Shown here in pieces: positions 3,464 through 27,256 of a DNA stretch of 64,000 nt. Numbering within the stretch: the stretch's first letter is position 1; the number at the start of each line of letters is the position of its first letter. The DNA is taken from positions 1 to 64,000 of IMG/VR virus record IMGVR_UViG_3300037725_000018. The stretch is one strand, 5' to 3'. Under the pieces are notes generated by a model. That model was not told where the DNA came from. It did no database searches and saw nothing but the letters and a program-made list of their open reading frames with translations. The position numbers and the translations under genes are program-made.

Positions 3464-4198
3464 CTATTCATACGTACTTAAAAACCTTTTTGGAATGTCG
3501 TTGTGAATAACCCGCGTTTCCGGCCAAACGTCTCTTGCTCTTGGCTCTAACCCATAATAGTTAAATCCATGCAAATTCAACTTGTGTGCGATATAGCTTT
3601 GGGCGTCGTATCTCATGTATTGAGGCTCTTTTTGGACCATCGGGGTGTATCCATCTTTTTTCATAGCTTCAACGTCAATTACTAAGATTGCATCCCCGTA
3701 ACTACCGTTAAGAAGCCGATCCGGGGTCGTCACGGTAAACACCGCATTTCCGATGGACCTATTTTTTAGACCTCTTGTTTGGTTTGTAGCGTTTAAACCT
3801 TCATCTAAAATCTTATCTACATACTTCGGTTGAGTAGCATGGAAAAGTTCATACTCGGTTCTTCCGACGTTTTCCCAAAAACGTCTGTTGTAGATTTCCT
3901 TCCAGTCTACTTCGGTTTCTTCGTAAATTTCACCCAAACTGTACATGTCGCGCATAAACCAGTCTTCAATCCCACTCACTTCGGGGTATGAAGAATCCGG
4001 GGCGGTTATGATTTTATCCTCTTCAGGAAGAACGACGAACTTGTGTCCATTTAAAGTTTCTTCGGTGTAATCTACGCCTTCTTCATCTAAAACACTTAAA
4101 GCTTCCCGGTAATCAAGATCCCAAAAAATGTCTTCAAGTTCAGCGTCAGACATTCCATTGGACCTTGCCTCACGAAGTAAATCATTAAATCGAATCAT
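3464..4198 (-). CDS. Putative ADP-ribosyltransferase-fold protein with N-terminal leader
   Basis: LFHATQPKYVDKILDEGL, VFT, SYGDAILVID and IPKRFL motifs; leader MIRFNDLLRE. Confidence 0.55.
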   Translation of the reverse strand: MIRFNDLLREARSNGMSDAELEDIFWDLDYREALSVLDEEGVDYTEETLNGHKFVVLPEEDKIITAPDSSYPEVSGIEDWFMRDMYSLGEIYEETEVDWKEIYNRRFWENVGRTEYELFHATQPKYVDKILDEGLNATNQTRGLKNRSIGNAVFTVTTPDRLLNGSYGDAILVIDVEAMKKDGYTPMVQKEPQYMRYDAQSYIAHKLNLHGFNYYGLEPRARDVWPETRVIHNDIPKRFLSTYE

Positions 4199-4303: not shown

Positions 4304-5053
4304 TTAAATGAAGTTTGGGTTATTTCGGACTCTAGCAACTTTCGAACGCCTACGTTTTTTGTATTCTTTTTCAGCGTCTTCACGGAGATCGTCCGGGTCG
4401 CTCATGTTTTCAACAACGTCTCCGGTTTCGTGTTCGGCATGAATCGCTCGGTTGATAAGATTGATTTTTTCTTTCTGTGGAAGCCTTCGTATGTTCTTTA
4501 AGTCTTTGTAAATTTCATATATGTCTTTGTGAACACCGTCTCCGAAAATTTGTTGAAGACGATCTACGTGTTCTTTCATCGCTTCAATCCAAACGTCTTC
4601 TTCTGTTGGGAAGGAGTACGGGTCGTCGGGGTCCATTTCATATTTGTCTGCCACCCGGTTATATATATCGGACCTTGAAACGTGATATCCCCATATCCGG
4701 TTATCAAGCTCTAACCTTTGTGGAATGGCTCTCCACTCTTCAAACGGGAGCTGGTAAACATCAATATTCATGCTTCTTAGACCCATTCCGATTCGTTCCA
4801 TATAGTCAGCATATGCTTCCCAACCTAAAAATCCGTGCTCCACGGACTTCCGGCGAAATGCTGGTTTAAGGATTTCAGCAATCCGTTCCCAATCGTAAGT
4901 GTCCCAATTGCCTGACATAGAACGGTAAAAATATTCCCGGACCATACCGTTTAAGTCGTCACGAAATATTCTTGAAGGGTCTTCTTTCTCCTGAAGGAGA
5001 AGGCTTACCTCTTCTCGAATTATTCTTCTAAGTCTTTGTTCGGAATTCATCAT
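4304..5053 (-). CDS. Hypothetical protein with IIREE leader (putative internal head protein)
   Basis: 249 aa; N-terminus MMNSEQRLRRIIREEVSLLLQE. Confidence 0.75.
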   Translation of the reverse strand: MMNSEQRLRRIIREEVSLLLQEKEDPSRIFRDDLNGMVREYFYRSMSGNWDTYDWERIAEILKPAFRRKSVEHGFLGWEAYADYMERIGMGLRSMNIDVYQLPFEEWRAIPQRLELDNRIWGYHVSRSDIYNRVADKYEMDPDDPYSFPTEEDVWIEAMKEHVDRLQQIFGDGVHKDIYEIYKDLKNIRRLPQKEKINLINRAIHAEHETGDVVENMSDPDDLREDAEKEYKKRRRSKVARVRNNPNFI

Positions 5054-14777: not shown

Positions 14778-16274
14778 GTGCCTAACAAGGAAGCCCCTTT
14801 ATCACAAAGCAAACAGGTTATGTCTTTTGACTGGAGCGATTACCAGAAACGGATCTTCGATTGGGGAATCAACGGGTCCGGAAACGCGGTTGTGGACGCA
14901 AAGGCCGGAAGCGGAAAAACAACCACGCTTATTGAGCTTGCACGTCGAATCAAAGAAGAGCGTGGAGAGGGTGGAGTTTTTGTTGCGTTCAACAAACACA
15001 TCGAGCGCGAACTCTCTGACAAGCTTTCCGATACCGATTTCATTGCAAAGACCGTCCACTCTTGCGGTTTCGGTGCAATCCGCTACGCCGGGTACGACGT
15101 TGACGTAAACTCTGATAAAATCAAAGACATCGTCAACGCCGTTACGTCCGATATGGCGTTCAAGAAAAACAAAAAGACGGTAAAGGCCAACCTTCGAAAC
15201 ATCGTTGACCTTGTTCGGCTCAATCTTGCGGACCCGTCCGATAAAAGCGAAGTTTTGGACGTTGCCCGTCACCACGGAATTTCCATTGAAGAGATTTTCC
15301 CGCTTATCGAAACGGTGATTAACCGTTCAAACAAGATTGCAAAAGAAAACGGGGAAATTGACTTCACCGACATGATTTATCTTCCGGTGAAGTGGAACCT
15401 TTCGATGTACCAAAACAAGTGGGTCTTCGTGGATGAAGCACAGGACCTAAACACTTGCACGCGCCGGGTGATTGACAAGATGCTTCGTCGGGACGGTCGC
15501 GCAATTTTCGTGGGAGATCCCCGTCAAGCCATTTACGGTTTCGCGGGTGCGGATTCGGATTCTTTCGAGCAGATCAAAGAAGAGTTTGAAACAACCGAAC
15601 TTCCGCTAAACATCACCTACCGTTGCCCGAAAAGCCACGTTGAAAACGTGCAACGCATTGTTCCGGAAATCGAGCCCCGTGAAAACGCCCCGGAAGGTAA
15701 AATCATCGAAGACAAGATGGACAGCCTACCGAACATTGCCGAAAGTGGGGATTACGTTTTGTGCCGCACAAACGCTCCGCTTATCCGGAATTGCATCCGT
15801 CTAATCAAGAACGGACAGCCTGCTCACGTGGTCGGACGAAACATCAAGCGGGGCCTTCTTCAAATTGCAAACCGGATTGATTTTGATAACTTCAACGAAA
15901 GCGTTCGTTCTTACTACCAAAGCAAGCGAGAGAAGCTTCTAGAGAACGATACGTCCGAAGAAAAGCTTCGGGCCTTCCGGGATAAGGTAGACGCCATTAA
16001 AACCGTCTACGGCGAATATGACGTTTCCACAAAGCGGGGTCTAAAAAGCAAGATCAAGTCCCTGTTCAAAGAAACGCCCGATTCGGTGAAGCTTATGACC
16101 GCACACAAGGCGAAGGGCCTTGAAAACGACCGGATTATCATCATCCGAACCGATCTTATGCCGCTTCGTTGGAAGGGTCAAAAGAAGTGGCAGGCAGAGC
16201 AGGAGATGAACCTGAAATATACAGCCGAAACTCGCTCTACGGATACGTTAATCTTCCTTCACCCTGAAAACTAA
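14778..16274 (+). CDS. UvrD/Rep-like superfamily 1 helicase
   Basis: AKAGSGKTT, VFVDEAQD, VGDPRQAIYGFAGA, TYRCPKS, TAHKAKGLE and YTAETRS (motif VI). Confidence 0.92.
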   Translation: MPNKEAPLSQSKQVMSFDWSDYQKRIFDWGINGSGNAVVDAKAGSGKTTTLIELARRIKEERGEGGVFVAFNKHIERELSDKLSDTDFIAKTVHSCGFGAIRYAGYDVDVNSDKIKDIVNAVTSDMAFKKNKKTVKANLRNIVDLVRLNLADPSDKSEVLDVARHHGISIEEIFPLIETVINRSNKIAKENGEIDFTDMIYLPVKWNLSMYQNKWVFVDEAQDLNTCTRRVIDKMLRRDGRAIFVGDPRQAIYGFAGADSDSFEQIKEEFETTELPLNITYRCPKSHVENVQRIVPEIEPRENAPEGKIIEDKMDSLPNIAESGDYVLCRTNAPLIRNCIRLIKNGQPAHVVGRNIKRGLLQIANRIDFDNFNESVRSYYQSKREKLLENDTSEEKLRAFRDKVDAIKTVYGEYDVSTKRGLKSKIKSLFKETPDSVKLMTAHKAKGLENDRIIIIRTDLMPLRWKGQKKWQAEQEMNLKYTAETRSTDTLIFLHPEN

Positions 16275-16365
16275 TTACAAGTGTCAGCCGGGGTTGCGGG
16301 TACATCTTGATAGGTGTACCCGCAACTTATATTAGAGACGGTTTTACGTGATACGTCGAACCGCT
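16230..16365 (+). repeat. Diverged direct repeat, copy 1 (helicase tail + hairpin + endonuclease 3' end)
   Basis: Encodes TRSTDTLIFLHPEN* on +; 16291-16365 matches 17487-17561 at 62/75 nt. Confidence 0.9.
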
Positions 16366-17371
16366 CACCAATCTCAGATTGTGTCATATCGGATTCTTCA
16401 AGAAGGTACTTTATCTCCCCGGCTTCTTTTTTTGAAAGCGCAGGTGTCTTAGGTTTTTTCAAATCTGGAATGGGTTGGGGCTTGGAAGGTTTTACACCTT
16501 CATGAATCTTACCAACATTGATTTCAGAAATGGTTTGGCTTTTTACGTCGTAATGTTTAGCAACAGACTTTTGGGTAAACTTGGTATTATTCAAAAGCCA
16601 TTTGATTTCTGAAACTTGCTCTTTGGACAGCTTGTAGGTCTTCTTCGGATCTAAAAAAACTTCTTGGGGCTTACGTGGCTTCACATCCGTATATCTTTTC
16701 CCGGTCTTGATGCAGGATATGGTATAGCTTGTAACGTCGTAGAGATCACCTATGTCCTTTTGAGAAGCATCCGTATTTTCTATAAGCCATTTGGCTTCGG
16801 CAACCTGTTTCTTGGTCATTCCCAATTTATTTGGTTTTGGAATTGATTCGGGTTTTGATGGTTCAACACGTATCCAGTTTCTTTCTTTGATAATATCGCA
16901 AATAGCCTGTGCCGATACTCCGTATTTATTTGCAAGCTGTTTTTGGGTACATTCGGTGTTTTTAACGAGCCATTTGATTTCGGCTACACTCTCTTCATCT
17001 AACAAAGAAAGTGGTGAATCACTACCATAAGGTGTTTGTCCCCCATAGGCGGTTCGAATAATGTTAGTGAGTTGATCAAAAATATAATCATCATCTAGAA
17101 CAAGTTGTTCTAGCTCTTTTGCCTCTTCTAAGGTCAGGTCAGTTGCAAGTTTTCTGCCGTAACATTTCCAACCGTTTTGCTTGCACTTTTTAATCGTAGA
17201 CGATTTGTGTGGATTTACATCGTACCGTAAACTGCTTTCAGAAAAGTGTCTATTCATTCTTCTTCCGGTTCCGCGCCCTACATAAAACGTCTTCGGAACA
17301 AAGTTATTTCGGGGCCGTTCGTGTACTAGAGCATAAACGTAGTATCTTCTATTAGAATCATCCATAGTCAA
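16271..17371 (-). CDS. GIY-YIG (LEM-3-like) endonuclease with four C-terminal HTH repeats
   Basis: YYVYAL...FYVGRG...RMNRH, EEAKELE and LTN; four repeats of K.(V/A).EIKWL...TQ..I...Y.V....IS.I; ATG at 17365. Confidence 0.85.
   Translation of the reverse strand: MTMDDSNRRYYVYALVHERPRNNFVPKTFYVGRGTGRRMNRHFSESSLRYDVNPHKSSTIKKCKQNGWKCYGRKLATDLTLEEAKELEQLVLDDDYIFDQLTNIIRTAYGGQTPYGSDSPLSLLDEESVAEIKWLVKNTECTQKQLANKYGVSAQAICDIIKERNWIRVEPSKPESIPKPNKLGMTKKQVAEAKWLIENTDASQKDIGDLYDVTSYTISCIKTGKRYTDVKPRKPQEVFLDPKKTYKLSKEQVSEIKWLLNNTKFTQKSVAKHYDVKSQTISEINVGKIHEGVKPSKPQPIPDLKKPKTPALSKKEAGEIKYLLEESDMTQSEIGERFDVSRKTVSNISCGYTYQDVPATPADTCN
16291..16328 (+). terminator. 17-bp stem-loop after the helicase stop (terminator or processing element)
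   Basis: gggttgcgggtacatct-tgat-aggtgtacccgcaactt; G-U pairs favour the + strand; U-tract is weak. Confidence 0.6.
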
Positions 17372-17395
17372 GTTCAGTTCTTGTTAATGTTCACA

Positions 17396-17406
17396 TTTAT
17401 ATATAG
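17396..17406 (-). promoter_or_regulatory. Candidate late promoter driving the endonuclease
   Basis: Exact CTATATATAAA, 31 nt upstream of the endonuclease ATG. Confidence 0.55.
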
Positions 17407-17428
17407 TATGATTGCCCGGTTTACTCAC

Positions 17429-17561
17429 ACAAGATCAACCGACACACTCATTCTTCTTCACCCCGAAAATTAATCGGTATTGATTGAAGCTGTGGGCACA
17501 TCTTGATAGGTGTGCCCACAGTTTATATTAGAGACGGTTTTACGGGATACGCCGAGCCGCC
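17429..17561 (+). repeat. Diverged direct repeat, copy 2 (displaced helicase tail + hairpin + endonuclease stub)
   Basis: Encodes TRSTDTLILLHPEN* on +; hairpin at 17487-17524. Confidence 0.9.
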
Positions 17562-17565
17562 TTTT
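17470..17565 (-). pseudogene. 3' remnant of a related endonuclease (last HTH only)
   Basis: KRRLGVSRKTVSNINCGHTYQDVPTASINTD* versus intact ERFDVSRKTVSNISCGYTYQDVPATPADTCN*; preceded by an in-frame TAA, no start codon. Confidence 0.8.
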
Positions 17566-17594
17566 TTACATGCACGGATACGATTTACTCGAAA

Positions 17595-18238
17595 ATGGTC
17601 ATAATTCAAACAAAAGAAGACCTCTCAAAAGAAGAGGTATACCCCGAGCATCATGGGAAAAATGAAATTTGGTTTAAAGATTCGATTAATGGCAATCTTC
17701 GTTTAAGCCAAGGCAAGATTGACCTTTTAAAAGACACCTATATTCAAGTCGATGAAAGAAAAATTTGGGTTTCCGGATGTGACTTCACGTACAGACACAG
17801 GCTTTCAAAATACAAAGGCCAATGGGACCGTTGGGGCATGAGGGTACGAAGAAGCTTCCATAGAAAAGACAGAAGAAAAGCCTTGCCAATTTGCGAACGA
17901 CACTTTCGGCTTCGTCGGTTAGATAAGCAACATAAACAAGCGAAAAAATACGGAAATATTTTAAAGAGTTGGGGTGTCCACTAATGCTTATATTTCTTGA
18001 AACAAATTCAGAGATTATAGAACTTACAAATGTTGGATTCGATTTTTCAAGCGCAGGCGTCTTTTCCTGTTGTAAAGACTATTCCGGAAGGTGTCATTAC
18101 ATGTTTGAACGCCCGATAGGAAATGGCACAATGACCTTCAAAGGAAGTAATATTTACGTGCGTTACCGGGTTAGAAAGTTTTGCAAAGAGGGCATGGGAA
18201 AGTCTGTGCCAATAAAATTTAAAGACTCTGTAAATTGA
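17595..18238 (+). CDS. Two hypothetical proteins (17595-17984, 17984-18238)
   Basis: Coupled ORFs with a TAATG overlap. Confidence 0.65.
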
Positions 18239-18314
18239 TTCTCTTACTTGGAACCAACCTCATGCACTTGCATTTAAGTATTGCGATTTTGAAAGAGAGA
18301 AACCTCCTGTTACG

Positions 18315-18629
18315 ATGGAAACTGAAGTTGACGGACTTTGCCACCTTCTTGCCCACGAGATCAACAAGCGGATTTCGGGGACTGTGATTGGAACCACCAC
18401 TCCTTCCGGTCGGACGTGGCACTACGCCTTTTTGACCGAAGATGGGTCCGTGGTTGACAAGCACGGTTTTCATGATTCGGTTGATTCATTTTTGGCAAAG
18501 GCCAAAGACAGTTTCGGTCGAGAAGATTTCTCAATTACCGAAGAATCCATTTCAAAAGAAATGGTGGATATATTTACCGAAGATGAAAAGCTTCGGGCTT
18601 CAACCTACGCAGAAAACCTTCTTAACTAA
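18315..18629 (+). CDS. Small protein with Cys-His-Asp (papain/transglutaminase-like) motif
   Basis: GLCHLLA...WHYAF...VVDKHG. Confidence 0.5.
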   Translation: METEVDGLCHLLAHEINKRISGTVIGTTTPSGRTWHYAFLTEDGSVVDKHGFHDSVDSFLAKAKDSFGREDFSITEESISKEMVDIFTEDEKLRASTYAENLLN

Positions 18630-18642
18630 GAAAAACACGTCC

Positions 18643-19695
18643 ATGTATCCAATTGGAAAAAAGGAAATTCAAAAGGCCGCAAGTCGGCTTGGAATTGAAA
18701 TTTCAAACGAGACGCCTTCCCCCGGAGACGCGTATCTTTGTGGAAGGAACACAAGCGTTCAAATGTTTACGTGCAATCGTGTTGAAAACGGCTGCGTGTT
18801 TCCGGAGGAAAGAGGATACCCATACAACACCGCAGAGTGCTATAAGGTAAAGACGTGACCCAACACACTTGCTAAAAGAGATCGCCCGTCTTAGAGGCTG
18901 TAAGAGGCTTCTAAGGTTAATCTACATACATGAAGAAAATAAAAGAACAATGACAATAGAAAGTGCAATTCAAGTACACAAGTTCTTAAAAGAGAATCCC
19001 GGTTTTCTTGACGGGAGAATTTCTTGCACCCTGTCTAAATCAAAACACAAAGACAGAGAAGACTCGTTTTTCAGTAGAGGATACACCGGAGCAATTTTAA
19101 AAGAAGAGATTGGTTTTCTTTTTTCTCAAACCGATGATTATTCTTCGGTTCACGGAGTTGCTGCAGAATTTGAAAACAGCGAAGTTTCTCGCACGATGAA
19201 GCACTCTGATTTTGATGAAATGATTAAAGAGGTTCATTTTTCCGGGACCGTAGAACACGTCTTGAACAAAATTTCTAGGTGGGAATCAAACGGCAAGTTC
19301 AAAAACGTAACGACAACCGAAAACTCTGTTCTCTTGTGGCCGAATGAAGACCGTTGGCCTGTAAAATATGATAACTATCCTATCAAATTTAAGGTTAAAT
19401 CAGTTGAAAAGGAGCGGAAGTTTCTGCTTTTCAAAAAGAAACCGTTTCGTTCTTACCACGTATTTCGGTTTATCTCTTCATGTATAGAAGACCGAATGTA
19501 TTCGCTTCCAAACCTTAACTAAAAGACCGGATGATAATTGTGGTCATTGAGCGGGAAGAACCGATAGAACATTGGTATGACGTAAGAGAACAAAATTTTG
19601 AAAATGTGGCACTTGTAAATCTTGTTAGAGGCGACAAAAAGCAAGTGCGAATATACGAAAACCTAATCAAGAAAGACTTCAACGAAAACTGGTAG
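18643..19695 (+). CDS. Three hypothetical proteins (18643-18858, 18950-19522, 19531-19695)
   Basis: Co-oriented ORFs; likely ATG starts chosen manually; the last is below the ORF-track cutoff. Confidence 0.55.
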
Positions 19696-25840: not shown

Positions 25841-27256
25841 TTACCGATTCTCAATTCCGGCAAGCTTCTTCATTCTTTCAGGGAAGCTTGCGTCTTCGTT
25901 GAGAATCTGTTTTGTCTCATTTGAAGAAGGACGTGTAGAGCCTTGTTGTCTAGAGGAACTTAGGTTAATTTGCTCTGTTAGACTCTCGGCTTGGTCCTTC
26001 TTGGTCCGTTGACTAGACTGACTTGCGGAGTCGGTAAGGTTCTCTGCAAGGTTTGTGTATGTCAACTTGACCTCACGAATATTTTGTGCTCGATCAAAGG
26101 AATCGATAACACGTTTCTTTTGGCGTTCGTTAAGGTCGAACGCATTGGTAAGCTTATTCGTGTAGAGCAGTTTGCTATTAATGAGATTAACCTCATTCAT
26201 TTCTTCTCGCAGGATTTTGAAAGCCTGTCGAAATTCGTCTAGCTGCTCTTTAAGCTTTTCGTTTTCACGACGAAGACTTCGGTAAGACTCTTCCATTTCG
26301 TCTTCGTCTTCCATTTCGTCGTAATCCATTTCTTCCATGTCGTCTTCCTCTTCAAGAAGAAGATCGCCATAGCTTACGTAAGATTCGCCAATGGTAGAAT
26401 CCGGCATGTCCTCTGCTTCGTAGTCCATCTCTCCGTATCCGTAGCCATAATCAAACTCTACGTAGTCGTCAGACGTGTCCATAAGATCGTCTACAACTTG
26501 GTCGTATGGACCGGAAACTGCGCTTGGCTCTTGCATTGGCTCGTCTCGGTCAACAGACGTTACGCCGTATTCACGAAGCGTACTTTCGAGTTCATCCACG
26601 TCGATTTCGTACATTACGTCGTCACCGCCGCTTCTGGAACGACCATTTTCAAGATCGTTAAGAAACTCGTCAATTTGTCGGTCTAGATCCCTTTCTTCAA
26701 TGTCCTCTTCAAGTTCGGATACAACTCGGTCTAGATCCAACTTCTCGTGAACGTCGTCCATTGCCATTGCTCCGTATCCGTCTTCGTGGTCGTCCACGTC
26801 AAGCATTGGAGCATCTTCGTGGCCTCCGTCGTGTTGAACCTCGTCGTAAGAAAGCTCGTCTGCAAGATCCGGGTCGCGGTGGCGCTCGCCTCCCGCAACC
26901 TCTTCATCGAGTTCAGAGAGGAAGTTTGCGATATTGTCCCAATCGCGCTCGGAAAGTCCAAAGGACTCTTCCATATCTTCTTCTTCCTCGTCCTCTTCTT
27001 CGTCTTCTTCGTCTTCATCGTCAAGGTCCATTTCGACCTCTTCTTCATCTTCCATGTCTTCCATGTCTTCTTCGTCGTAGTCACCTTCCATTTCTTCTTC
27101 GGCTTCCCGTTGAAGTTGGTCGGCTACAACTTGACGAATCTTTGGCGTGAAAGCTTCACGAAGATAGTCAAAAGCGTTTTCTTTTGCTACTTCTCGAAGC
27201 GTTTTGGCGTCAGCCATCGCTTCTTTGAGCATTTCACTATCTGTTTGATCTTTCAT
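25841..27256 (-). CDS. Prohead core scaffold protein (gp22-like)
   Basis: LKEAMADAKTLREVA N-terminus, acidic middle and NEVNLINSKLLY...FDRA C-domain; directly upstream of MCP. Confidence 0.8.
   Translation of the reverse strand: MKDQTDSEMLKEAMADAKTLREVAKENAFDYLREAFTPKIRQVVADQLQREAEEEMEGDYDEEDMEDMEDEEEVEMDLDDEDEEDEEEDEEEEDMEESFGLSERDWDNIANFLSELDEEVAGGERHRDPDLADELSYDEVQHDGGHEDAPMLDVDDHEDGYGAMAMDDVHEKLDLDRVVSELEEDIEERDLDRQIDEFLNDLENGRSRSGGDDVMYEIDVDELESTLREYGVTSVDRDEPMQEPSAVSGPYDQVVDDLMDTSDDYVEFDYGYGYGEMDYEAEDMPDSTIGESYVSYGDLLLEEEDDMEEMDYDEMEDEDEMEESYRSLRRENEKLKEQLDEFRQAFKILREEMNEVNLINSKLLYTNKLTNAFDLNERQKKRVIDSFDRAQNIREVKLTYTNLAENLTDSASQSSQRTKKDQAESLTEQINLSSSRQQGSTRPSSNETKQILNEDASFPERMKKLAGIENR

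What the first reader, a model, noticed from the sequence alone, without database searches (positions are those of the whole stretch)
16230..17473. Endonuclease cassette inserted in helicase motif VI brings its own recoded copy of the helicase C-terminus
The helicase ends ACT CGC TCT ACG GAT ACG TTA ATC TTC CTT CAC CCT GAA AAC TAA (16230-16274; TRSTDTLIFLHPEN*). After the antisense GIY-YIG gene and its promoter comes ACA AGA TCA ACC GAC ACA CTC ATT CTT CTT CAC CCC GAA AAT TAA (17429-17473; TRSTDTLILLHPEN*). The two copies share 13/14 residues but differ at 14/45 nt. Ten codons differ synonymously, including the first eight in a row. The duplication starts inside conserved SF1 motif VI (Y-x-A-x-T-R). 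Established: homing endonucleases target conserved coding motifs, and some fungal mitochondrial GIY-YIG elements repair their host gene with a duplicated 3' end. Inference: this is a phage intronless element that splits an essential gene without splicing. It restores the gene with a cleavage-resistant recoded tail and leaves the original tail orphaned.
Basis: partly seen in the sequence, partly recalled or inferred. Interest (0 to 1): 0.85.

Follow-up and report, generated by a model that had tools for sequence, protein, structure and literature searches.

The report
Phage endonuclease cassette carrying a helicase tail
A selfish endonuclease gene sits inside the end of a phage helicase gene and brings its own copy of the last 14 codons, so the helicase stays whole; closely related phages from the same samples occur both with and without the insert.

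Summary
The repeat is real and about 135 nt long, not 45 nt. It covers the helicase tail (16230-16274 vs 17429-17473; 14 nt differences, 1 amino-acid change) and then the stop-overlapping last ~29 codons of the antisense endonuclease gene (16275-16365 vs 17474-17561). The endonuclease has a GIY-YIG-type nuclease domain, four helix-turn-helix repeats and its own TATAAATG promoter.

The decisive evidence comes from a sister strain about 9% diverged.
- Four contigs are "empty": helicase, terminator, next gene.
- Five contigs are "filled".
- Filled equals empty plus one 1184-nt unit. The unit's left edge lies in the first 20 nt of the motif VI Thr-Arg codons and its right edge follows ...ATGATT.
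- Over more than 4.2 kb of flank, the alleles differ at 3 scattered sites plus 5 synonymous sites clustered in the cassette-side tail.
- The downstream orphan tail matches the empty allele 45/45.

The window carries the same 1184-nt unit (16230-17413). Its orphan is not simply "the original tail". It is a more diverged tail fused to a fossil of a second endonuclease copy, which points to repeated invasion.

Deliberate "recoding", cleavage resistance and the cut site remain untested. The closest precedent is fungal mitochondrial mobile ORFs. I found no phage example.

The parts
14820..16274 (+). SF1 (UvrD/PcrA-like) DNA helicase, 484 aa. Its last 14 codons and stop are supplied by the cassette.
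   Evidence: Pfam UvrD-helicase 3e-22 and UvrD_C; PHROG 1967 DNA helicase 2e-93. Matches PDB UvrD 4c2u, including motif VI at the C-terminus.
16230..17413 (.). The mobile unit, 1184 nt: helicase tail copy 1, antisense endonuclease gene and its promoter, ending ...ATGATT.
   Evidence: The same 1184-nt unit, ungapped and 88-96% identical, is present in sister-strain filled contigs and absent from their empty alleles, with the same right end.
16230..16274 (+). Tail copy 1 (TRSTDTLIFLHPEN*), the tail actually used by the helicase. It is cassette-linked.
   Evidence: In frame with the helicase. It differs from every endonuclease-free or orphan tail at tail positions +21, +24 and +36, as does the sister strain's cassette tail; at +21 and +36 the two cassette tails carry the same base.
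16271..17365 (-). Free-standing homing-endonuclease gene, 364 aa: N-terminal GIY-YIG-type nuclease domain and four helix-turn-helix repeats. Its stop overlaps the helicase stop.
   Evidence: N-terminal domain alone scores 27.5 bits against PF22945 LEM-3_GIY-YIG (cut-off 27), and 4 of 4 homologues match. PADLOC PD-T4-3 3.7e-6. Foldseek top hit is 9u75_A, PD-T4-3 endonuclease. HTH families. dN/dS 0.14 against the sister-strain copy.
16291..16328 (+). 17-bp hairpin directly after the helicase stop, lying inside the endonuclease C-terminal codons. Probable terminator of the helicase transcript.
   Evidence: Free energy -31.9 kcal/mol, z = -6.35. Read from the sequences, three base pairs differ from copy 2 by changes on both sides that keep pairing.
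17366..17413 (-). Endonuclease upstream region with TATAAATG (17394-17401), resembling a T4 late promoter.
   Evidence: the motif occurs 8 times in the window against 2.55 expected. This stretch differs at only 1 nt from the sister strain.
17414..17428 (+). 15 nt of uncertain origin between the cassette end and tail copy 2. It may be a further decayed piece of helicase motif VI with one codon missing.
   Evidence: Absent from the sister strain's junction. No other copy in the window beyond chance.
17429..17473 (+). Orphan tail copy 2 (TRSTDTLILLHPEN*), not joined to any helicase body.
   Evidence: Its closest tail is that of the endonuclease-free relative L012 (37/45). It matches copy 1 at 31/45.
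17470..17565 (-). Fossil 3' end (about 30 codons plus stop) of a second, diverged endonuclease gene. Its stop overlaps the orphan tail's stop, as in the live pair.
   Evidence: It translates as RRLGVSRKTVSNINCGHTYQDVPTASINTD* against ERFDVSRKTVSNISCGYTYQDVPATPADTCN*. tblastn E = 1.8e-7.
17487..17524 (+). Second copy of the 17-bp hairpin.
   Evidence: Free energy -34.5 kcal/mol, z = -7.57.
17567..17984 (+). Point where colinearity with the empty alleles resumes, followed by a 129-aa gene of unknown function. Not part of the cassette.
   Evidence: L021 3691-5678 matches window 17567-19556 at 86.8%.

Best explanation
This is an intron-less, intein-less homing-endonuclease cassette lodged in the 3' end of a phage SF1 helicase gene. 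The 1184-nt unit (16230-17413) holds three things: a copy of the helicase's last 14 codons and stop; an antisense gene for a GIY-YIG-type endonuclease with four HTH DNA-binding repeats; and that gene's own promoter.

Because the unit supplies a tail in frame, the helicase stays a single intact ORF. The tail that was there before is pushed downstream as an orphan.

Proposed mechanism (inferred):
- The endonuclease cuts endonuclease-free helicase alleles in or next to the motif VI codons (T-R-S-T-D-T-L).
- The break is repaired from a cassette-bearing genome during co-infection.
- The helicase body serves as the left homology arm and the donor's orphan tail as the right arm. The unit can therefore enter any related helicase gene, whatever lies downstream.
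- The few synonymous differences in the cassette-borne tail, together with the changed sequence after the stop, would protect the filled allele.

In the window, the orphan is a tail from a more distant lineage still attached to the last ~30 codons of another endonuclease copy. This site was therefore invaded at least twice, and the older endonuclease was mostly deleted.
For: 1. Natural before-and-after pair. The sister-strain empty allele L021 and filled alleles L013/L022 are colinear over more than 4.2 kb. Outside the tail they differ at 2 sites upstream and 1 downstream. They also differ at 5 sites within 22 nt of the cassette-side tail, all synonymous, and by the 1184-nt unit. The orphan tail and terminator of the filled allele match the empty allele 45/45.
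2. Both junctions are identical in four filled contigs (a fifth covers only the left junction), and four contigs share the empty junction. Both alleles occur in the same samples (3300038620, 3300038621).
3. The window has the same unit: same length, same right end, uniform 88-96% identity. What lies to its right is quite different. The unit is therefore separable from its right-hand context.
4. Both orphan tails diverged almost only synonymously. P is below 5e-6 for the window pair and 4.6e-4 for the sister-strain pair. Each tail was therefore a working helicase tail until recently.
5. Homologues of the endonuclease (42-44% identity) lie convergently just after the same helicase gene in two more lineages, L001 and L018/L019. 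They are absent from the close relative L017 of L001, and from L012.
6. The endonuclease is intact, its motif residues are conserved in four homologues, and dN/dS is 0.14.
7. No intron RNA is detectable.
Against: - No cleavage has been shown. GIY-YIG assignment rests on borderline scores: 27.5 bits against a cut-off of 27, a model with pLDDT 61, and Foldseek E = 3.8e-3.
- In the sister strain, the filled left junction is identical to the empty allele for the first 20 nt of the tail. Immunity would then depend on 5 synonymous sites and the sequence after the stop, which is unproven.
- The empty allele could also arise from the filled one by recombination within those 20 identical nt. The direction of any single event is therefore not fixed by the pair alone.
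- Synonymous divergence of the cassette between window and sister strain (dS 0.29) is about that of the helicase (0.33). This shows no recent transfer between these two lineages.
- No donor, and no genome carrying tail 2 on a working helicase, was found.
- The 15 nt at 17414-17428 are not explained by simple homologous homing from a sister-strain-like donor.
Confidence: 0.75

Rival explanations
1. Loss only. The cassette with its flanking repeat is old and no longer mobile. The empty alleles are recent deletions produced by recombination between the two tail copies.
For: A crossover in the 20 identical nt at the start of the two tails would give exactly the empty allele. Cassette dS is about equal to helicase dS between window and sister strain.
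Against: - An orphan that had been non-coding for that long should carry replacement changes. It has none among 5 differences (P = 4.6e-4).
- A third strain, L033, is 6.5% diverged and also empty, with the identical tail and terminator.
- The endonuclease is under purifying selection.
- The unit sits next to two unrelated right-hand contexts.
Confidence: 0.12
2. Plain tandem duplication of the helicase 3' end and neighbouring gene within one genome, followed by decay. No homing is involved.
For: The layout tail-endonuclease-tail-endonuclease fragment looks like a tandem duplicate with an internal deletion. The nearest endonuclease-free relatives carry a copy-1-like tail.
Against: - Copies made in one genome start identical, and the unused one drifts freely. 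Here the differences are almost all synonymous.
- Hairpin base pairs changed on both sides while keeping pairing (sequences).
- In the sister strain the used copy is the foreign one and the unused copy equals the empty allele.
- The window's copy 2 is much more diverged (31/45) than the 9% divergence of the flanks.
Confidence: 0.05
3. The antisense gene is not an active nuclease. It would be a DNA-binding regulator (one source names it an XRE-family regulator) that happens to lie next to a recombination hotspot.
For: The strongest profile matches are HTH families. A source names it 'DNA-binding XRE family transcriptional regulator'. The nuclease-domain evidence is borderline.
Against: - All four homologues match the GIY-YIG model.
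- Tyr, Arg, His, Glu and Asn positions are invariant.
- The domain matches the PD-T4-3 nuclease both in sequence and in fold.
- Presence or absence at one exact site with co-converted flanking markers is the signature of homing endonucleases.
Confidence: 0.06
4. Assembly artefact: contigs mis-joined through the repeated tail.
For: Several short contigs end at or near the repeat: L011, L015 and L016 end there, and L032 starts exactly at the first base of the tail.
Against: The longest identical run between copies is about 20-26 nt. The window structure is identical in three independent assemblies, one of them a 223-kb contig. The filled and empty junctions each recur in 4-5 contigs from different samples. 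Contig breaks at the branch point are expected when both alleles are present.
Confidence: 0.02

Closest known systems
Fungal mitochondrial mobile endonuclease ORFs that carry a foreign gene C-terminus (Allomyces macrogynus atp6; Glomus sp. atp6, atp9, cox2, nad3), as described in PMC3630166
   Same: An endonuclease ORF (GIY-YIG in the Glomus atp9 case; LAGLIDADG in the other three) is inserted in the 3' part of an essential gene together with an in-frame replacement C-terminus. The native C-terminus is displaced downstream. The inserted and native copies are nearly identical as protein but diverged as DNA. The native copy matches the close relative that lacks the element; here that holds in the sister strain.
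   Different: - Here the host is a bacteriophage genome.
- The endonuclease gene is antisense and convergent, with its own promoter and a stop that overlaps the host gene's stop. It is not in phase with or downstream on the same strand as the host gene.
- The duplication is only 14 codons.
- The window's orphan carries a fossil of a second endonuclease.
Free-standing GIY-YIG (Seg) and HNH (Mob) homing endonucleases of T4-like phages and 'intronless homing' (review PMC2988022)
   Same: A free-standing endonuclease gene sits between or next to conserved genes. It shows presence/absence polymorphism among relatives and co-conversion of flanking markers. It has a GIY-YIG nuclease joined to HTH DNA-binding modules and a promoter resembling a late promoter. 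The L001 and L018 relatives show this classical intergenic form after the same helicase.
   Different: In the classical cases the element lies in an intergenic space and the recipient's flanking sequence is replaced, not duplicated. Here the unit's left boundary is inside the coding sequence and a duplicate tail is kept. The word 'duplicat' does not occur in that review.
Endonuclease insertions that split phage genes (mobE in Aeh1 nrdA, mobA between T4 genes 39 and 60, seg in gene 43 of phage 25; PMC2988022, PMC3045599)
   Same: A free-standing endonuclease invades a functionally critical coding region without an intron or intein, and the host function survives.
   Different: In those cases the host gene becomes two polypeptides that reassemble. 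Here the host gene stays a single ORF because the element brings the missing end.
PD-T4-3 5hmC-specific endonuclease (PDB 9u75; PADLOC PD-T4-3)
   Same: It is the best sequence-profile and fold match of the N-terminal nuclease domain.
   Different: PD-T4-3 is a bacterial defence enzyme with a different C-terminal part. The similarity covers only about 60-90 residues and is weak.

Membership tests
Free-standing GIY-YIG homing endonuclease | GIY-YIG nuclease domain | tested here: met
   Met, but weakly. PF22945 scores 27.5 bits against a cut-off of 27 for the N-terminal 117 aa, and 4 of 4 homologues match, best 8.9e-8. PD-T4-3 profile 3.7e-6. The model has beta-beta-alpha-alpha-beta-alpha-alpha order, and the top Foldseek hit is 9u75_A with probability 1.0 and E = 3.8e-3. 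A profile search of PDB sequences found nothing.
Free-standing GIY-YIG homing endonuclease | Conserved catalytic-type residues (two Tyr motifs, Arg, His, Glu, Asn) | tested here: inconclusive
   Y9, Y11, Y28, G30, R31, G32, R36, H40, E84, E86 and N101 are invariant in four homologues at 42-91% identity. Mapping them onto I-TevI catalytic residues rests on my memory, not on an alignment made here.
Free-standing GIY-YIG homing endonuclease | Separate sequence-reading DNA-binding module | tested here: met
   Four tandem HTH repeats (Sigma70_r4 5e-13, HTH_3 1.5e-10 and others).
Free-standing GIY-YIG homing endonuclease | Present or absent at one exact site among close relatives, with co-converted flanking markers | tested here: met
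   Filled L013-L016 and L022 against empty L011, L021, L023 and L033. The 5 synonymous markers are confined to the 22 nt next to the insert.
Free-standing GIY-YIG homing endonuclease | Site-specific cleavage of the endonuclease-free allele, and resistance of the filled allele | not testable with these tools
   Needs purified protein or a cross.
Mobile ORF with carried C-terminus (fungal mitochondrial type) | Endonuclease ORF with an in-frame replacement 3' end inserted in a host gene, and the native 3' end displaced downstream | tested here: met
Mobile ORF with carried C-terminus (fungal mitochondrial type) | The displaced (native) tail is closer to the element-free relative than the inserted tail is | tested here: inconclusive
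   Met in the sister strain: orphan 45/45 against cassette tail 40/45. Not met in the window: orphan 33/45 against cassette tail 41/45 to L021. The window orphan is closest to L012 at 37/45.
Mobile ORF with carried C-terminus (fungal mitochondrial type) | The orphan tail is not expressed as part of the host protein | not testable with these tools
   From sequence alone: it follows a stop, a strong hairpin and an antisense gene. No RNA data are available.
Group I/II intron or intein-borne endonuclease | A self-splicing RNA or protein element around the endonuclease gene | tested here: not met
   No Rfam family reaches its gathering score in the window. In 15900-17900 at E <= 1 there are only chance-level hits, one of them to the hairpin itself. 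The helicase ORF is continuous and the endonuclease is on the other strand.
Gene-splitting endonuclease insertion (mobE/nrdA type) | The host gene is divided into two separately translated pieces | tested here: not met
   The helicase is one 484-aa ORF, colinear end to end with endonuclease-free homologues.

The most novel reading that the evidence does not exclude
Phage homing endonucleases can turn themselves into self-sufficient units that need no splicing. By capturing the short 3' end of the essential gene they target, they keep that gene intact. They also keep the displaced tail as a built-in right homology arm, so they can enter the coding sequence of any related gene whatever lies downstream. 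The same site is then invaded repeatedly, leaving nested fossils of tail plus endonuclease end. The host gene's terminator hairpin ends up inside the endonuclease's own coding sequence. If this is general, peptide-identical but synonymously diverged gene tails flanking nuclease genes would mark a so-far uncatalogued class of phage mobile element and would map endonuclease target sites directly from sequence.
Probability: 0.45. Interest if true: 0.7.

Novelty: new variant of a known kind. Interest (0 to 1): 0.6.

Why it matters
Three routes are well described for an endonuclease gene to sit inside an essential gene: self-splicing introns, inteins and outright gene splitting. The route seen here is to bring a spare copy of the gene's end. 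It is documented for fungal mitochondria, and I found no phage example in the literature I could search.

This locus offers an unusually clean case. Empty and filled alleles are near-identical, come from the same samples, and have nucleotide-exact boundaries. That gives a directly testable prediction for the cut site (the motif VI codons) and for the immunity determinants (three synonymous positions and the sequence after the stop).

It also shows two things for annotation and phylogeny. An orphan gene tail next to a nuclease gene can be read as a record of past invasions. And the 3' ends of phage core genes can have a different ancestry from the rest of the gene.

Tried and rejected
- GenBank phages by blastn: one distant hit only, the 484-kb uncultured phage LR756508.1.
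- IMG/VR by protein and by alignment: only contigs identical to the window, or relatives at 41% identity or less.
- IMG/VR and JGI metagenome contigs by a hairpin DNA pattern: only the window's own contigs and one bacterial tuf terminator, which is a chance match to a palindromic pattern. That used the single metagenome scan.
- Genome with tail 2 on a working helicase, or an intact second endonuclease: none found. The endonuclease search gave one 90% cluster. The helicase search gave only P0001 and P0002 above 62% identity.
- Wider endonuclease family: 959 clusters at E <= 1e-3. Two more distant members (L034, L036) lie in unrelated contexts without flanking gene-tail repeats. L001 and L018 also lack such repeats.
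- Profile search of the nuclease domain against PDB sequences: no match.
It was rerun without that row. The model is of only moderate confidence, pLDDT 61.
- The 15 nt at 17414-17428: no templated origin elsewhere in the window.
- Other cassettes of this kind in the window: none.
- Introns and tRNAs: none.
- I considered deriving the window's right junction from a sister-strain-like donor, or the reverse, by simple homologous repair. Neither direction reproduces the 15-nt difference, so I reject both.
Full report
**1. Observation**

They differ at 14 nt. Ten codons differ synonymously and one non-synonymously, and both end in TAA. In 200,000 simulations of 14 random substitutions, none kept one or fewer amino-acid changes. 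A tblastn of the tail peptide over the whole 64-kb window finds the second copy at E = 9e-6.

The tail begins at the Thr-Arg of SF1 helicase motif VI, shown by alignment to D. radiodurans UvrD (4c2u).

The repeat is longer than reported. It continues beyond the stop for about 90 nt (16275-16365 vs 17474-17561), with a 70-nt core at 87% identity.

**2. Anatomy of the locus**

- *Helicase.* The plus strand encodes a 484-aa UvrD-like helicase, 14820-16274.
- *Endonuclease.* A 364-aa gene (16271-17365) lies convergent on the minus strand, and its stop overlaps the helicase stop. It has a nuclease domain and four HTH repeats.
- *Nuclease domain.* The N-terminal 117 aa just reach the Pfam cut-off for a GIY-YIG model: 27.5 bits against 27, with all four homologues matching. 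The domain matches the PD-T4-3 nuclease profile at 3.7e-6. A moderate-confidence model (pLDDT 61) has PD-T4-3 (9u75_A) as its only convincing Foldseek hit.
- *Promoter.* TATAAATG lies 28 nt upstream of the endonuclease ATG. The motif is enriched in the window, 8 occurrences against 2.55 expected.
- *Hairpin.* A 17-bp hairpin directly follows the helicase stop and lies inside the endonuclease's C-terminal codons. It occurs in both repeat copies, at -31.9 and -34.5 kcal/mol with z = -6.4 and -7.6. Read from the sequences, three base pairs changed on both sides while keeping pairing.
- *Second copy.* It consists of an orphan helicase tail and a roughly 30-codon fossil of another endonuclease gene, whose stop overlaps the tail's stop just as in the live pair.
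- *No intron.* No intron-like RNA is present.

**3. Relatives**

Endonuclease homologues (42-44% identity) lie convergently just after the same helicase gene in two other lineages:
- the 484-kb uncultured phage LR756508.1 (L001; helicase 61% identical);
- Logan contigs L018 and L019.

L017 is a close relative of L001 (81% nt) and lacks the endonuclease. There the gene is a classical intergenic insertion without any tail duplication. L012 (helicase 87% aa) also lacks it.

This endonuclease clade is therefore repeatedly tied to the 3' end of this helicase, as expected if it targets that gene.

**4. The natural experiment**

A sister strain about 9% diverged from the window exists in both states, in the same set of JGI samples.
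- Empty: L021 (5.7 kb: helicase, 72-nt spacer with an ordinary terminator, 136-aa gene), L011 and L023. L033 is a third strain, 6.5% diverged, and is also empty.
- Filled: L013, L014, L015, L016 and L022.

Comparison of L021 with the filled allele:
- Upstream they differ at 2 sites in about 3.3 kb, and downstream at 1 site in about 0.94 kb.
- They also differ at five sites at L021 positions 3601-3622. All five are synonymous and all lie in the tail copy joined to the helicase.
- The second tail copy, with the terminator after it, equals the empty allele exactly.

Filled is therefore empty plus one 1184-nt unit. The unit's left edge lies somewhere in the first 20 nt of the tail, which are identical in the two copies. 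Its right edge follows ...ATGATT.

Each junction recurs in 4-5 contigs. Several contigs break exactly at the branch points, and L032 starts at the first base of the tail. This is expected when both alleles are present in a sample.

**5. What the divergence pattern says**

Five differences with no replacement has P = 4.6e-4 under random change, and the window pair is far more extreme. Each orphan tail was therefore a working coding tail until shortly before it was displaced.

That rules out an old in-place duplication that then drifted. It also argues against the idea that the empty alleles are merely deletions from an ancient filled state. Individual losses by recombination in the 20 shared nucleotides remain possible.

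The endonuclease itself is under purifying selection, with dN/dS 0.14. The comparable values are 0.09 for the helicase and 0.14 for the next gene.

**6. The window itself**

The window holds the same unit (16230-17413). It is also 1184 nt, ungapped, and 88-96% identical to the sister strain's throughout. The flanks are similarly diverged. Only 17414-17566 has no counterpart.

Its orphan tail is not the expected native tail:

| Comparison | Identical nt of 45 |
|---|---|
| Window copy 2 vs nearest empty allele (L021) | 33 |
| Window copy 1 vs L021 | 41 |
| Window copy 2 vs L012 | 37 |

The explanation is that cassette tails and native tails in this clade differ by only about 10%. The window's orphan comes from a more distant lineage and still carries the end of that lineage's endonuclease.

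The most economical history is two successive invasions at the same site, followed by deletion of most of the older endonuclease. This is inference. I found no donor, and no genome with tail 2 in working position. The 15 nt at 17414-17428 remain unexplained.

**7. Mechanism**

Shown:
- a discrete 1184-nt unit;
- its exact boundaries;
- its presence or absence in near-identical backgrounds;
- the foreign origin of the tail that is in use.

Inferred:
- The protein cuts endonuclease-free alleles in or near the motif VI codons.
- Repair copies the unit from a filled genome, using the helicase body and the donor's orphan tail as homology arms.
- The filled allele is protected by its synonymous differences and by the changed sequence after the stop.

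Three tail positions (+21, +24, +36) separate both cassette-linked tails from all four kinds of endonuclease-free or orphan tail. The sample is small, so this is a lead only.

The claim of deliberate 'recoding' is not needed. Ordinary divergence under purifying selection gives the same pattern.

**8. Comparison with what is known**

The nearest precedent is the fungal mitochondrial mobile ORFs that carry a foreign C-terminus and displace the native one: Allomyces atp6, and Glomus atp6, atp9, cox2 and nad3 (PMC3630166). The logic is the same. Here, however, the element is in a phage, is antisense with its own promoter, duplicates only 14 codons, and shows a nested fossil.

Among T4-like phages, free-standing endonucleases are described in two forms. 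Some are intergenic elements that co-convert their flanks. Others are insertions that split a gene into two polypeptides (PMC2988022, PMC3045599). That review does not mention duplications, and my other literature searches found no phage case. The library is incomplete, so priority is not established.

**9. Verdict**

I file it as a new variant of a known kind. It is of moderate to good interest, mainly because the empty/filled pair makes the model directly testable.

Noticed in passing
window 17595-17984 (129-aa ORF); L021 3698-4108: The gene just downstream of the locus (129 aa here, 136 aa in the sister strain) has no family match in Pfam above threshold, PHROGs or NCBIfam. It is missing altogether from the more distant relative L012, where the helicase is followed directly by the next gene.
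   Followed up: partly
window 26291-27103: A dense run of degenerate 9-nt-phased repeats (TTC/GTC/ATC-rich on the plus strand). On the minus strand it would encode a very acidic Asp/Glu-rich stretch.
   Followed up: no
window, 8 sites (e.g. 30712, 37738, 45275, 47294): TATAAATR, the T4 late-promoter-like octamer, occurs 8 times against 2.55 expected. With a T4 Gp23-type capsid hit on the related contig L023, this suggests a distant T4-like transcription scheme in this large phage (its contig is at least 223 kb).
   Followed up: partly
L031 1870-1893: A bacterial contig has, right after tuf (EF-Tu) and before tRNA-Trp, secE and nusG, a terminator hairpin with the same loop and inner stem as the phage hairpin. 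This is most likely a chance match to a palindromic search pattern.
   Followed up: partly
L034 5387-7741: Near a distant paralogue of the endonuclease, a 784-aa PIF1/AAA_30 helicase carries LAGLIDADG/Hom_end hits. It is probably an intein-containing helicase, so a second kind of mobile element targets a helicase in a related setting.
   Followed up: no
L018 about 4990-5003: A run of about 14 G lies directly after the helicase stop in the Logan contigs. It may be a sequencing or assembly artefact.
   Followed up: no
L018 4909-4977; L001 6356-6430: In the two lineages with a classical downstream endonuclease, the helicase tail has replacement changes right at motif VI: TRSKKELI in L018 and SRSRSTDTL in L001, against the usual TRSTDTLI. 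These could be target-site immunity changes.
   Followed up: no
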